A stretch of 56,721 nucleotides of DNA from assembly GCF_001194135.2 (NCBI RefSeq), contig NC_068992.1, positions 62,495,171-62,551,891 of the forward strand, in the 5' to 3' direction. The notes beneath the pieces are model-generated. The model made no database searches and was not told the origin of the DNA. It saw nothing but the letters and a program-made list of their open reading frames with translations. Position 1 is the first letter of the stretch; each line of letters begins with the position of its first letter. The stretch is from Octopus bimaculoides (lineage: Eukaryota). A program made the translations under genes and the position numbers. This document shows positions 43,316-54,702 of this stretch, piece by piece.

Positions 43316-43425
43316 GAATGGCAGGACCTCAAACTAAGATGGAATCCGCAGGAATATGGTGGCGTGAATCGACTGTACGTGCCCTCGGTGGAACTCTGGC
43401 TGCCAGACATCGTACTATACAATAA
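43316..43425 (+). CDS. nAChR loop-A exon, variant A (110 bp): [36 protein letters not shown](N)
   Basis: ttctaacccttgctttAG|GAATGG...TACAATAA|GTAAGT. 110 nt, starts in phase 0 (joins exon 12757-12801 in frame) and ends in phase 2. TACTAAC at 43270-43276. Contains the canonical W-x-D...WNP..YGG...VPS..W.PDIVLYNN motif. Confidence 0.96.
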
Positions 43426-43843
43426 GTAAGTAGTATAGTGCCTCATAGGTGGTACTGCGTCATACTGACGTGTGCCAAGCAGGAAATAGTTATCTGTTCA
43501 CATCGTTATTTATAATATTGAATAGAGAATTGAGCCACATGAAAACTTGTTGTAAAGGTAATCTTTGTTGATGTTAGCTAGTTCTAGATATATTGTAAAT
43601 AAATAAAAAAAAAAGCATATAGAAAAAAATTTAACGACAATAAAAGCAACAGCTTAGCCATTTGCGTGATAGAAAGTACATTTGAAACGAACGATTTTTC
43701 TCATAAATATTTAGACAAATGCGCTTATAAGACACACTACATTATATCCTATAATGATACGTCACAGCCTATTAAGGAGAAGTAGCATCATCGGCCATTA
43801 AATACACGATACACTACGCACTGTAGAACGCATATTCACACAT

Positions 43844-43898
<55 letters not shown>

Positions 43899-44263
43899 CA
43901 TACACACACACACACACACACACACTCGCAGGTACATATTATGCAGAGGTATGTACACGTTTATCCTCCTATACATAGGTATAAATAAACGAAATGTGCT
44001 GACGCACGTTAATTATGAATAATCATTATGATTATTCAGATTATAGAGAAGTGATGCGAGAGAGACAATCAAATGTCTATTTAATTACATGCTTGCATGC
44101 AACTACCTACATGAATTTACATATCTACAAATACACACCAGAATGTACATGCGTAAATGCATGTTTCTATGCGTATACTTACATACATACATGCATACAT
44201 ACATACATGCATACATACATACATGCACGCACACACACACATACACACTCGCACATACACACA

Positions 44264-44339
<76 letters not shown>

Positions 44340-44426
44340 AAGAGAGAGAGAGATATGTATATATATTTATGAGTGTGTGTGTATGTGTATACATATGCAT
44401 ACATACGCACACACGCACACACACAC

Positions 44427-44462
<36 letters not shown>

Positions 44463-44464
44463 TT

Positions 44465-44765
44465 ATGAGGGCGCATGGCCCAGTGGGTAGGGTGTTGCAT
44501 TCATTATCGCAACATATTGGTTTCAATTCCTAGACTGGGTGGTGCATTGTGTTCTTGAGCAAAACACTTCATCTCATGTTGTTCGACGATCACTTCAGCA
44601 CATGACATGTGGCACACGGTGCACCTGTTCAGACGACGTCGATTTGATGGGGAGAATGAGCTAATATGCGGCACGAACACTTGATCACTATAAACAATTC
44701 ATTAGTGCAGGTCTCTCGGCAAAATCAGAACGCTCATTCGTCGTCTTCGACGGGAGAGTCGACCA
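44465..44765 (+). mobile_element. tRNA-derived SINE, third family (single copy seen)
   Basis: GGCGCATGGCCCAGTGGGTAGGG (A box-like), GGTTTCAATTCC (B box-like), then TGTGTTCTTGAGCAAAACACTTCATCTCA, a segment typical of conserved-domain SINEs. Confidence 0.65.
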
Positions 44766-51500: not shown

Positions 51501-51686
51501 TACTGACTTTAATAGAATATATTATAGCCTAAATATTGGTGGATTCCCAAAAATGATTTATATGAATGAAGCAAATACCGTATCTTTACGTCCTCTATAT
51601 AACTAAATGGCAACCGAATTCAAATATGAGTGCATATACATACAGGCACGCACGCACACAGACACAAACACACAGTACACACACAC

Positions 51687-51750
<64 letters not shown>

Positions 51751-52560
51751 NNNNNNNNNNNNNNNNNNNNNNNNNNNNNNNNNNNNNNNNNNNNNNNNNN
51801 NNNNNNNNNNNNNNNNNNNNNNNNNNNNNNNNNNNNNNNNNNNNNNNNNNNNNNNNNNNNNNNNNNNNNNNNNNNNNNNNNNNNNNNNNNNNNNNNNNNN
51901 NNNNNNNNNNNNNNNNNNNNNNNNNNNNNNNNNNNNNNNNNNNNNNNNNNNNNNNNNNNNNNNNNNNNNNNNNNNNNNNNNNNNNNNNNNNNNNNNNNNN
52001 NNNNNNNNNNNNNNNNNNNNNNNNNNNNNNNNNNNNNNNNNNNNNNNNNNNNNNNNNNNNNNNNNNNNNNNNNNNNNNNNNNNNNNNNNNNNNNNNNNNN
52101 NNNNNNNNNNNNNNNNNNNNNNNNNNNNNNNNNNNNNNNNNNNNNNNNNNNNNNNNNNNNNNNNNNNNNNNNNNNNNNNNNNNNNNNNNNNNNNNNNNNN
52201 NNNNNNNNNNNNNNNNNNNNNNNNNNNNNNNNNNNNNNNNNNNNNNNNNNNNNNNNNNNNNNNNNNNNNNNNNNNNNNNNNNNNNNNNNNNNNNNNNNNN
52301 NNNNNNNNNNNNNNNNNNNNNNNNNNNNNNNNNNNNNNNNNNNNNNNNNNNNNNNNNNNNNNNNNNNNNNNNNNNNNNNNNNNNNNNNNNNNNNNNNNNN
52401 NNNNNNNNNNNNNNNNNNNNNNNNNNNNNNNNNNNNNNNNNNNNNNNNNNNNNNNNNNNNNNNNNNNNNNNNNNNNNNNNNNNNNNNNNNNNNNNNNNNN
52501 NNNNNNNNNNNNNNNNNNNNNNNNNNNNNNNNNNNNNNNNNNNNNNNNNNNNNNNNNNNN

Positions 52561-52602
<42 letters not shown>

Positions 52603-54104
52603 GTGTATATACATATATATACACACGCATATGTATGCATATATAAATATATATGTGTCTATATTCACATATAATACAAATGCCTATATATATACATGTA
52701 TGCATATACAAATATATACATATATATACATGTGTGTATATGTGTGTATATATATGCATATATGTATATATATGTGTGCATATATATGCGTGTATAATCA
52801 TGTATAGATCTCTTAGAGTTCCTTCATTTCTTTGTAATATCCAACATCATTCAACTCTTTACATGAAAACATAAAAGTATACCAATGTTTCTATAAGTAC
52901 TTATAAAATATTCTTTTTATTATATATATCATTCATATCTTTTTCTCTTACTCCGTTACATCTAAGATAAAAGCTTTTCATTTTGTATATATTTTAAGTA
53001 ATATTTTTGTTGTATCGTCCTAGAAATTTTTGACTGTGTAAGATCATTGCCTATAAACACGCATTCATTCATAAATACAAATAGACACAAATAAACACGA
53101 ACATATATACTCATATACATATATGCATAGACATATTACCTTTTTGTTTAAACCTCTGTCTGTTATAGTCTGGGTATATGGTGCATTTATCTGGTTGATT
53201 CTCGTAGATTCACGTAGATTCACCAGATGACTGATGATGCACCAATGAAATAATCTCAGTATTATCCTTCACAGCTGTTACGCCTTTATAAAAGCTATAA
53301 TAAATTAACTATTATAAAAAAGTTAATCATCATCTGCACATTTAACTCGGCGCGGATGTATTTAAAGGAGCAAGACATATCTATCATATAGATTAAATTT
53401 ACATCATTAGCTTATAAAGATATATTCTGTCAAACAAAAATAATAAGGGAGACAACCTTAAGTTTAAATTTGAATATGGATATTCAGAGAAGTTTGAGTT
53501 TAATCTCCCCAAGTTACATAAATCTCAGTCGATGTATGGTCGGAGAAGAACTGTTAAGGCTACACTTCGATGAAGAGATCTCATGAAGATGAAACATATC
53601 AGTAGATATCAGTGTACTCGCCAGACGTCCGACTCATTTCTCATTTCTTTCTTACATTTGATTATAATTAATCTGAAGTAAGAATTTCATTCGCATAGCG
53701 TTTTATTATTTTCAAGCTGAATTATTATTTTGTCCCACTCCCTATATTTTTAACATTAACTCTTATACGATTTAAATAAGACAGTAAATATACAATTCCG
53801 TTCCCACAGAGATTAGGCCACACACTGTGTGAGGAAATTTTTACGTGCAAACCTTCCAAAAACACGGGCTATACAATGAAAAGTAATCGTTAGTATGGTA
53901 TGTCTTCACTTCTGCTGAAGGAAAACCAACGGGTTATGCATAAATACATGCATTCATATATGCATGCACAACTATGTATGCAGTTACATATATTTAGACT
54001 CTAACACACTTTCAAAGCAAAGAGTCAAAAATCAAATTTAAATCATGTGTTATCTCGAATATTTCTTTTAAATCGCATATCGGAAGTTGACACTGCACAC
54101 TTCC

Positions 54105-54137
<33 letters not shown>

Positions 54138-54592
54138 NNNNNNNNNNNNNNNNNNNNNNNNNNNNNNNNNNNNNNNNNNNNNNNNNNNNNNNNNNNNNNN
54201 NNNNNNNNNNNNNNNNNNNNNNNNNNNNNNNNNNNNNNNNNNNNNNNNNNNNNNNNNNNNNNNNNNNNNNNNNNNNNNNNNNNNNNNNNNNNNNNNNNNN
54301 NNNNNNNNNNNNNNNNNNNNNNNNNNNNNNNNNNNNNNNNNNNNNNNNNNNNNNNNNNNNNNNNNNNNNNNNNNNNNNNNNNNNNNNTATATATACCCAT
54401 GCATTTATATATATATATATATACACACACACATATATATATGCATATACATACATACATATATATATTTATCTACCTAACTGCATATAAGAACATAACA
54501 TACCTACATATATATATACAAACATACAAATTCAGATTTGTTTGTGGACAAATTGAAAGCAACAATTTTCTTAACTTATGGTCTTGGTAAAG

Positions 54593-54702
54593 GAATGGTG
54601 GGATATATGGCTGAAATGGAACCCAAGCGAGTACGCAGGTCTGAAAACCATCGAAGTTCCGGCTGCAGAGATATGGACGCCAGATTTGGTCTTGTTCAAC
54701 AA
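54593..54702 (+). CDS. nAChR loop-A exon, variant B (110 bp): EWWDIWLKWNPSEYAGLKTIEVPAAEIWTPDLVLFN(N)
   Basis: ttcttaacttatggtcttggtaaAG|GAATGG...TTCAACAA|GTAAGT. Exactly 110 nt, same phases as variant A, no stop codon, 20/37 residues identical to variant A, with structural W, D, WNP, VP, W.PD, VL and NN kept. Confidence 0.9.

What the first reader, a model, noticed from the sequence alone, without database searches (positions are those of the whole stretch)
43316..54702. Tandemly duplicated, probably mutually exclusive loop-A exon in an nAChR subunit gene
SEEN: two exons of exactly 110 bp, 11.2 kb apart, both starting AG|GAATGG and ending AA|GTAAGT, both stop-free and in frame with the 45-bp exon at 12757. 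They are only 20/37 identical in protein, yet every structural residue is kept (W, D, WNP, EY, VP, W.PD, VL, NN). INFERENCE: this pattern indicates an old duplication with both copies under selection. Including both (220 nt) or neither shifts the frame relative to a phase-2 downstream exon, so only either-or splicing gives full-length protein. KNOWN: insects have mutually exclusive nAChR exons, but as I recall these involve other exons (Drosophila alpha6 exon 3a/3b is the loop-D exon, alpha4 exon 4/4' is the Cys-loop exon). I know of no described loop-A pair in molluscs, but I cannot search the literature here.
Basis: partly seen in the sequence, partly recalled or inferred. Interest (0 to 1): 0.92.

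Follow-up and report, generated by a model that had tools for sequence, protein, structure and literature searches.

The report
Ancient alternative loop-A exon pair, nicotinic receptor
One nicotinic acetylcholine receptor gene carries two old, intact copies of the 110-bp exon for part of its transmitter-binding site; the same ordered pair occurs in snails, a clam and rotifers, and one related transcript uses the second copy instead of the first.

Summary
Exon A (43316-43425) and exon B (54593-54702) are both 110 bp. Both run from AG|GAATGG to AA|GTAAGT, and both are open in frame with the 45-bp exon at 12757-12801. They are 19/36 identical in protein, and their third codon positions are saturated. 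No gap touches an exon. The window holds no other nAChR exon.

The same architecture (exon 3, a Tyr-type exon 4a, a Phe-type exon 4b, exon 5, all on one strand) is found elsewhere. It occurs in sequence free of unread letters from Biomphalaria glabrata and from an unidentified organism, and in Tegillarca granosa, bdelloid-rotifer-like contigs and two metagenome contigs. There the two copies lie only 0.4-2.2 kb apart, so no gene can sit between them. A transcript contig from a close relative of the unidentified organism joins exon 3 to 4b to exon 5 and skips 4a. Including both copies gives an early stop codon.

B is therefore most likely the conserved alternative "4b" of an ancient, mutually exclusive pair. 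The pair switches the loop-A tyrosine to phenylalanine and changes several other residues. Splicing in this organism is not shown. I found no published description. Insect alternative nAChR exons lie elsewhere, so this is a new member of a known kind.

The parts
12757..12801 (+). Constitutive 45-bp exon ('exon 3'), encoding DEKNQIMTTNVWLRQ. It is the shared upstream partner of both 110-bp exons.
   Evidence: flanked by ..tttcag| and |gtgaga. It is the only 45-bp exon-3-like exon in the sequenced part of the window. Its protein is 15/15 identical to exon 3 of L082 and of Tegillarca L085.
43316..43425 (+).
   Evidence: Pfam PF02931 46.3 bits. It shares 24-28 of 36 residues with first-position exons of other loci.
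43426..54592 (+). Intron between the two copies, 11,167 bp as scaffolded. It contains six assembly gaps.
   Evidence: No nAChR-like coding sequence was found here at tblastn E<50, and no second 45-bp exon. Every gap is bounded by simple repeats.
54593..54702 (+).
   Evidence: Pfam PF02931 36.7 bits. Its best matches among the compared exons are second-position exons: L082 24/36, Tegillarca 22/36, rotifer 21/36 (L026 and L055 also 21/36). Against first-position exons of the six shared-pair loci it scores 16-20/36.

Best explanation
A and B are the two members (4a and 4b) of an ancient tandem duplication of the 110-bp exon inside one nAChR subunit gene.

Inferred mechanism: each mRNA takes exactly one copy between the 45-bp exon and the downstream 'NADG...' exon. 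Because 110 is not a multiple of three, taking both copies or neither shifts the frame into early stop codons. Only single-inclusion mRNAs can therefore encode a receptor, and the others would be truncated or removed by nonsense-mediated decay.

The exon encodes the end of strand beta2, the beta2-beta3 loop, strand beta3 and loop A. Choosing 4b changes the loop-A tyrosine (alpha7 Tyr93) to phenylalanine. It also replaces residues at alpha7-equivalent positions 64, 77, 79 and 87. The predicted result is a subunit with altered agonist binding, gating or assembly.

Shown: exon anatomy, conservation, frame logic, the same architecture in other taxa, and one 4b-only transcript in another organism. 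Inferred: use of both exons in this organism, regulation of the choice, and the functional effect.
For: Anatomy and selection.

No competing gene: tblastn with full-length nAChRs, and with exon 2 and exon 5 of related loci, finds only the three exons in 56.7 kb. There is only one exon-3-like 45-bp exon.

Same architecture elsewhere, always on one strand and always Tyr-type first:
- L082/83/84, no unread letters: exon 3 74-118, 4a 1266-1375, 4b 1896-2005, exon 5 from 2340.
- Tegillarca granosa L085: exon 2, exon 3, 4a 13050-13159, 4b 13734-13843.
- Biomphalaria glabrata L087: 4a 9961-10070, 4b 12301-12410, exon 5 near 20525, no unread letters.
- Rotifer-like L039/L073: a complete gene from exon 2 to TM4 with one exon 3, the pair, and one exon 5.
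- L003 and L026.

RNA: L086 aligns to L082 in three blocks, namely exon 3 (100%), 4b (95.5%) and exon 5 (95.2%), with nothing from 4a. Deposited predicted proteins from Rotaria, Adineta and Elysia crispata carry 4b joined to the exon 5 sequence; the two rotifer proteins also carry full exon 3.

Frame: the A+B join in the window stops at ..LYNKNGGIYG*. In L082 both double inclusion and skipping give early stops.

Age: 4a-4b identity within a locus is 14-22/36, whereas 4a-4a identity between loci is 24-28/36.
Against: No transcript from this organism was available; the protein collections held no hit above 77% identity to A or 68% to B.

Exon 5 lies outside the window. Six gaps separate A and B, so linkage rests on scaffolding plus conserved order.

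B's acceptor (ggtaaag|G) has a poorer pyrimidine tract than A's, although this is not a consistent trend across species.

A neighbour-joining tree of the 36-residue exons is unresolved, so a single origin of all 4b exons is not proven.

No 4a-containing and 4b-containing transcripts were seen together in one species.
Confidence: 0.8

Rival explanations
1. B is exon 4 of a different nAChR gene. That gene could be a nested or tandem paralogue, or sit on a contig wrongly scaffolded into this intron. B would then resemble A only because all paralogues share the 45/110-bp exon structure.
For: The 45/110-bp structure and the GAATGG...AA|GT ends are family-wide, so they do not prove same-gene origin. 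Six gaps lie between A and B, and B sits only 205 bp from a gap. B is no closer to A (19/36) than to vertebrate alpha1, and its best solved-structure match is an invertebrate receptor, 8bx5, at 25/37. Mollusc nAChR genes are massively expanded and often tandem (PMC6896357).
Against: No exon 1, 2, 3 or 5+ of a second gene is present anywhere in the window. They would all have to fall inside about 2.1 kb of estimated gap. The identical arrangement (Tyr-type exon, then Phe-type exon, 0.4-2.2 kb apart, one exon 3 and one exon 5) is seen in other taxa, including stretches with no unread letters. B's best matches are those second-position exons.
Confidence: 0.05
2. B is a relic in this lineage: an exon that was alternative in ancestors but is no longer spliced here, or is used only negligibly.
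For: B's 3' splice site has purines at positions -3 to -9. The intron to A is very long, at 11 kb. No RNA evidence is available. 4b exons evolve faster than 4a exons, with mean pairwise identity 19.3 versus 25.8 of 36.
Against: B keeps an open frame of 36 codons in 35% GC DNA. It has a consensus GTAAGT donor, an AG acceptor with a CTTAAC branch-point-like motif about 20 nt upstream, every family-invariant residue, and the 4b-typical IEVP...W(T)PD.VLFN signature shared with L082 and Tegillarca. Only a very recent loss of use would leave no trace.
Confidence: 0.1
3. The exons are not strictly exclusive. Transcripts with both copies or neither are made on purpose, to give truncated, soluble N-terminal products or to down-regulate the gene.
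For: Double inclusion and skipping both give early stops. Insect alpha6 transcripts with both exon 3 copies or with none are reported (PMC2045683; PMC13578988).
Against: The truncated product would end within strand beta2/beta3, and I judge that too short to fold as a ligand-binding domain (my inference, not tested). The only relevant transcript seen (L086) has a single copy. Long-term protein-level conservation of both copies argues that each is translated in frame.
Confidence: 0.05

Closest known systems
Insect nAChR alpha6 exon 3a/3b (mutually exclusive 45-bp exons)
   Same: It is a tandem exon duplication inside the ligand-binding domain of an nAChR gene. It is conserved across orders and alters residues near the binding site (PMC2064938; PMC5111602; PMC13578988).
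   Different: It affects the neighbouring upstream exon (45 bp, near loop D). Because 45 is a multiple of three, double inclusion or skipping stays in frame and is observed. Here the 110-bp loop-A exon is duplicated, and the frame enforces exclusivity. The clades also differ: arthropods there; molluscs and rotifers here.
Insect nAChR alpha4 exon 4/4'
   Same: It is an ancient pair of alternative exons in an nAChR extracellular domain, and one variant assembles less efficiently (PMC2064938; PMC2045683).
   Different: Those exons encode loop E and the region around the Cys-loop, not loop A. Despite the shared name 'exon 4', they are not the homologous exon.
Insect RDL exon 3 and exon 6, and GluCl exon 3, alternative exons
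   Same: These are mutually exclusive tandem exons that tune the ligand-binding domain of a Cys-loop receptor (PMC2064938).
   Different: They belong to anion-channel subfamilies, sit at different exon positions, and their variants differ by only a few residues. Here 17 of 36 residues differ.
Accessory or orphan subunits with Phe at the loop-A tyrosine position (human beta3; receptor of PDB 8bx5)
   Same: 4b carries ..PD.VLFN, like beta3 (PDIVLFEN) and 8bx5 (PDIVLFNN) (alignments).
   Different: Those are separate genes. Here the Tyr form and the Phe form are encoded by one gene through exon choice.

Membership tests
Mutually exclusive exon pair arising by tandem exon duplication | Two adjacent homologous exons on the same strand within one gene | tested here: met
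   A and B are homologous (19/36 aa; both match PF02931 positions 56-92) and lie on the + strand with no other coding exon between them.
Mutually exclusive exon pair arising by tandem exon duplication | Same length and same intron phases, with intact splice sites on both copies | tested here: met
   Both are 110 bp, with AG acceptors and GTAAGT donors. The same holds for the shared Tyr/Phe-type pairs in six other loci (L082, L085, L087, L039, L003, L026).
Mutually exclusive exon pair arising by tandem exon duplication | Both copies are flanked by the same constitutive upstream and downstream exons | tested here: inconclusive
   A single upstream exon 3 is present in the window. The downstream exon is outside the window. 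In L082, L039, L003 and L087 there is one exon 5 after the pair.
Mutually exclusive exon pair arising by tandem exon duplication | Mature mRNAs contain exactly one of the two exons | not testable with these tools
   No RNA data exist for this organism. The indirect evidence is a stop codon on double inclusion and one transcript contig from another organism with 4b only.
Nicotinic acetylcholine receptor subunit (Cys-loop receptor, Neur_chan_LBD) | Significant match to the ligand-binding-domain profile, with the conserved W..D..L.W...Y...P...W.PD..L.N pattern | tested here: met
   PF02931 scores are 71.6 bits (exon 3 + A) and 61.2 bits (exon 3 + B). The top solved-structure matches are nAChR subunits.
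Nicotinic acetylcholine receptor subunit (Cys-loop receptor, Neur_chan_LBD) | Cys-loop, four transmembrane helices, and loop C (vicinal Cys for alpha-type) | not testable with these tools
   These exons lie outside the window. The L086 and rotifer genes have the Cys-loop, TM1-TM3 and a Y.CC motif. L003 lacks the CC motif.
Insect alpha4 exon 4/4' or alpha6 exon 3a/3b orthologue | The alternative exons cover loop E and the Cys-loop (alpha4), or are the 45-bp exon near loop D (alpha6) | tested here: not met
   The duplicated exon here covers alpha7-equivalent residues 59-95, including loop A W86/D89/Y93. Only one 45-bp exon exists. The insect definitions come from PMC2064938 and PMC2045683.

The most novel reading that the evidence does not exclude
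A single nAChR gene has, since before the split of mollusc classes and possibly since the base of Spiralia, encoded two versions of its binding site by exon choice. The 4a version has the canonical loop-A tyrosine. The 4b version has phenylalanine, as in accessory or orphan subunits, together with a re-modelled beta2-beta3 loop and beta3 strand. One gene would thus supply both an agonist-binding subunit and an 'accessory-like' subunit, chosen by cell type. This would be a splice-level equivalent of the alpha/non-alpha gene duplications seen in other phyla.
Probability: 0.3. Interest if true: 0.7.

Novelty: new member of a known kind. Interest (0 to 1): 0.5.

Why it matters
Alternative exons in the ligand-binding domain are a main source of receptor diversity in insects, and they matter for insecticide action. 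For molluscs and other spiralians, the papers I could search describe gene-number expansion but no such splicing.

A conserved switch at loop A, carrying a Tyr-to-Phe change at an aromatic-box position, predicts two pharmacologically distinct receptors from one gene in animals used as neurobiology models (Aplysia-like and Lymnaea-like snails, and octopus if this window is cephalopod).

It also matters for annotation. Gene models that keep only the longest isoform, or that include both exons, will misrepresent this subunit.

Tried and rejected
1. Searches of the 5.8-billion-protein collection with exon 3 + A and exon 3 + B returned only short fragments from other organisms. Nothing exceeded 77% identity to A or 61% to B. 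An HMMER scan of 1.84 billion representatives with B gave at most 68% identity. Exact look-up of the B-containing ORF found nothing. Hence there is no data from this organism.

2. Searching papers for the peptide strings gave 0 hits.

3. L001, the contig carrying P0002, has a single exon-3+4 fusion and no pair.

4. A neighbour-joining tree with bootstrap on the 36-residue exons is unresolved. The 4a exons cluster and the 4b exons scatter on long branches, so I do not claim a proven single origin.

5. The idea that 4b has a systematically weaker acceptor was rejected, because pyrimidine content shows no consistent trend across seven loci.

6. L088 (from P0216) looked like a 4a-to-exon-5 transcript. 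It is in fact genomic DNA with different intron positions, so it was not used.

7. The organism behind L082 and L086 could not be identified from accession searches.

8. Competing RNA structures (docking and selector sites) were not analysed, because no closely related set of introns was available for covariation.
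Full report
OBSERVATION

A is 43316-43425 and B is 54593-54702. Each is 110 bp, preceded by AG, begins GAATGG, ends AA and is followed by GTAAGT. In the frame set by the 45-bp exon 12757-12801 (DEKNQIMTTNVWLRQ), both are open.

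- A = [36 protein letters not shown].
- B = EWWDIWLKWNPSEYAGLKTIEVPAAEIWTPDLVLFN.
- 19 of 36 full codons encode the same residue, and nucleotide identity is 62/110.
- Identity by codon position is 23, 27 and 10 of 36. Silent sites are saturated while replacement sites are conserved.
- Alone, each peptide passes the Pfam Neur_chan_LBD cut-off of 26 bits: A scores 46.3 and B scores 36.7.

This is not a chance resemblance. A neutral copy as old as the silent-site saturation implies would not have kept its frame, both splice sites and every family-invariant residue.

GAPS

No exon touches a gap. Exon 3, A and B lie in the blocks 12167-13780, 42342-45897 and 54388-56721. Six gaps lie between A and B. 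Every one is bounded by simple repeats such as (AT)n, (CA)n or (CTGT)n, which is the usual reason a short-read assembly breaks. Continuity cannot be proven from the window. The argument for it is comparative and is set out below.

WHAT ELSE IS IN THE WINDOW

tblastn was run with two full-length nAChRs, and later with exon 2 and exon 5 peptides of related loci. It finds only these three exons in 56.7 kb, on either strand. A scan of all AG...GT-bounded open 45-mers finds only one exon-3-like exon. So there is no trace of the end of one gene and the start of another between A and B. The downstream 'ADG' exon lies beyond the window.

RELATED LOCI

A scan of metagenome contigs with an alignment of exon-4 peptides returned 80 loci. 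Ten of these carried two or more exon-4 homologues, and seven of the ten carried tandem same-strand pairs: L039/L073, L026/L024, L003, L053 and L055. Further loci came from protein hits. In every locus listed below, both copies are 110 bp with AG and GT boundaries.

- L082/L083/L084 are Logan assemblies of three sequencing runs, from an unidentified organism, with no unread letters. Exon 3 is at 74-118 and its protein is 15/15 identical to the window's. 4a is at 1266-1375, 4b at 1896-2005, and exon 5 starts at 2340 (N|ADGNYEV...). All of this lies within 2.7 kb.
- L085 comes from chromosome CM056600.1 of GCA_029721355.1. A preprint's data list names that assembly as the clam Tegillarca granosa. 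It holds exon 2, an identical exon 3 at 9759-9803, 4a at 13050-13159 and 4b at 13734-13843. Its only gap lies downstream of 4b.
- L087 comes from Biomphalaria glabrata strain iBS90, GCA_025434165.1. It holds 4a at 9961-10070, 4b at 12301-12410 and exon 5 near 20525, with no unread letters.
- L039/L073 hold a complete gene: exon 2, exon 3 at 8937-8981, 4a at 9108-9217, 4b at 9998-10107, then exon 5 through TM4. Its 4b form matches deposited proteins from the bdelloid rotifers Rotaria and Adineta.
- L003 and L026/L024 show the same layout.

The copies are 433-2230 bp apart, so nothing but an intron can lie between them. In five of the six loci (and in the window) the order is the same: a ..WLPDIVLYN exon first and a ..PD.VLFN exon second. 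In L026 both copies end in YN.

WHICH COPY IS WHICH

The window's A shares 25-27 of 36 residues with the first-position exons of the five loci's matrix, but only 16-23 with second-position exons. B's best matches are second-position exons: L082 24, Tegillarca 22, rotifer 21 (L026 and L055 also 21). Against first-position exons of the shared-pair loci it scores 16-20.

Within each locus, 4a and 4b are less alike (14-22/36) than 4a exons of different organisms (24-28/36). The duplication is therefore older than the divergence of these lineages: gastropod, bivalve, this organism, and probably rotifers.

A neighbour-joining tree of 36 columns has no useful support. A single origin is thus the parsimonious reading, not a demonstrated one.

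L053 (copies 66 nt apart) and L055 are different. Their copies are more alike (27/36 and 25/36) and sit in other nAChR types. They are independent duplications of the same exon.

RNA EVIDENCE

L086 is a 1421-nt Logan contig from run SRR4183539. It reads straight through the signal peptide, exon 2, exon 3, 4b and exon 5, and on through TM1-TM3. Aligned to genomic L082 it gives three blocks: exon 3 (100%), 4b (95.5%) and exon 5 (95.2%). Nothing from 4a aligns.

This is a spliced mRNA in which 4b replaces 4a, from a close relative of the L082 organism. It has a one-base deletion in exon 5 relative to L082, probably an assembly error.

Deposited gene models from Rotaria, Adineta and Elysia crispata also join 4b to the exon 5 sequence; the two rotifer models also carry full exon 3. 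These are predictions, not transcripts.

FRAME LOGIC

In the window, exon 3 + A + B reads ..LYNKNGGIYG*, a stop nine codons into B. In L082, double inclusion stops after eight codons, and skipping both stops after two. Only single inclusion gives a receptor. This enforcement through the reading frame, plus likely nonsense-mediated decay, is inferred from sequence and not observed.

WHAT THE CHOICE CHANGES

In alpha7 numbering the exon spans residues 59-95. From my own knowledge of nAChR structures, this covers the end of beta2, the beta2-beta3 loop, beta3 and loop A (W86, D89, Y93).

Across seven 4a and eight 4b exons, the columns that separate the two sets are as follows:

| alpha7 position | 4a | 4b |
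|---|---|---|
| 64 | Lys in 5 of 7 | never Lys |
| 77 | R/V/H | T/E/I/N |
| 79 | Tyr | E/L/S in 7 of 8 |
| 87 | Leu | variable |
| 93 | Tyr | Phe in 7 of 8 |

Tyr93 is an aromatic-box residue of the principal face, and I recall that Tyr93Phe lowers ACh sensitivity in muscle-type receptors. I also recall that position 77 lies on the complementary face. Both statements come from memory and were not tested here.

Phe at this position is also seen in human beta3 and in the invertebrate receptor 8bx5, which is B's best solved-structure match at 25/37. 4b evolves faster than 4a, with mean pairwise identity of 19.3 versus 25.8 of 36.

RIVALS

- Separate or mis-scaffolded paralogue. This reading is undercut by the absence of any other exon and by the conserved layout elsewhere. 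I give it 0.05.
- Lineage-specific relic. This cannot be excluded without RNA. However, B shows no decay and keeps the 4b signature (IEVP...W.PD.VLFN). I give it 0.1.
- Purposeful double inclusion or skipping. This is unlikely given long-term conservation of both reading frames. I give it 0.05.

LITERATURE

Insect alpha6 exon 3a/3b lies near loop D, and alpha4 exon 4/4' covers loop E and the Cys-loop (PMC2064938, PMC2045683).

The survey of lophotrochozoan nAChR expansion does not mention splicing at all (PMC6896357). An octopus ligand-gated-channel survey kept only the longest isoform. Searches combining nicotinic receptor, mutually exclusive exons and mollusc names found nothing relevant.

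I therefore found no description of this pair. Public genome annotations may nonetheless already list the isoforms, and I could not check that.

VERDICT

It is not yet supported by RNA from this organism. It is a new member of a known kind: tandem, mutually exclusive exons in the ligand-binding domain of Cys-loop receptors. It is notable for its position (loop A), its age and its breadth across spiralian animals. The organism of the window was not identified with the tools.

Noticed in passing
L053:8200-8485: In an alpha7-like nAChR gene on a metagenome contig, two 110-bp exon-4 copies (27/36 identical) are separated by only 66 nt. This is an independent, younger duplication of the same exon. 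The intron may be too short to be spliced out between the two copies.
   Followed up: partly
L055:878-1734: Another independent exon-4 pair (25/36 identical, 637 nt apart). The first copy has a GC rather than a GT donor (CAACAG|gcaagt).
   Followed up: no
L039:4437-6249 (- strand): On the rotifer-like contig a second, alpha7-like nAChR gene lies head-to-head with the 4a/4b gene, about 2.5 kb from it. It has a single exon 4.
   Followed up: no
L086:about 440-450: The 4b transcript contig has a one-base deletion relative to genomic L082 just after ..LMTK. This shifts the frame in exon 5. It is probably an assembly error, but a real variant is not excluded.
   Followed up: no
proteins P0018, P0013, P0015, P0041: Other deposited or called proteins contain two near-identical exon-4 segments in tandem. 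These are either very recent exon duplications in other nAChR genes or assembly and prediction artefacts.
   Followed up: no
L001:10267-10287: A second in-frame 'PDIVLYN' lies 45 bp downstream of the fused exon 3+4 on a 284-kb ENA contig. It looks like a short local duplication at the exon end.
   Followed up: no
window:42652-56531 and all gap edges: The introns are packed with microsatellites, including (CA)n, (AT)n, (TAT)n and (ATT)n. (TCTTCT)n runs for about 40 copies at 55573-55817, and (AAT)n/(GAT)n lies just upstream of exon 3 at 12650-12700. Every assembly gap after position 40000 abuts such a repeat.
   Followed up: partly
window:54593-54702 versus PDB 8bx5: B's closest solved structure is the invertebrate 'Acetylcholine receptor' of entry 8bx5 (25/37 identical, same ..IWTPD.VLFNN end). 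I recall this as an orphan annelid receptor, but that is from memory. B is closer to it than to A (19/36).
   Followed up: partly
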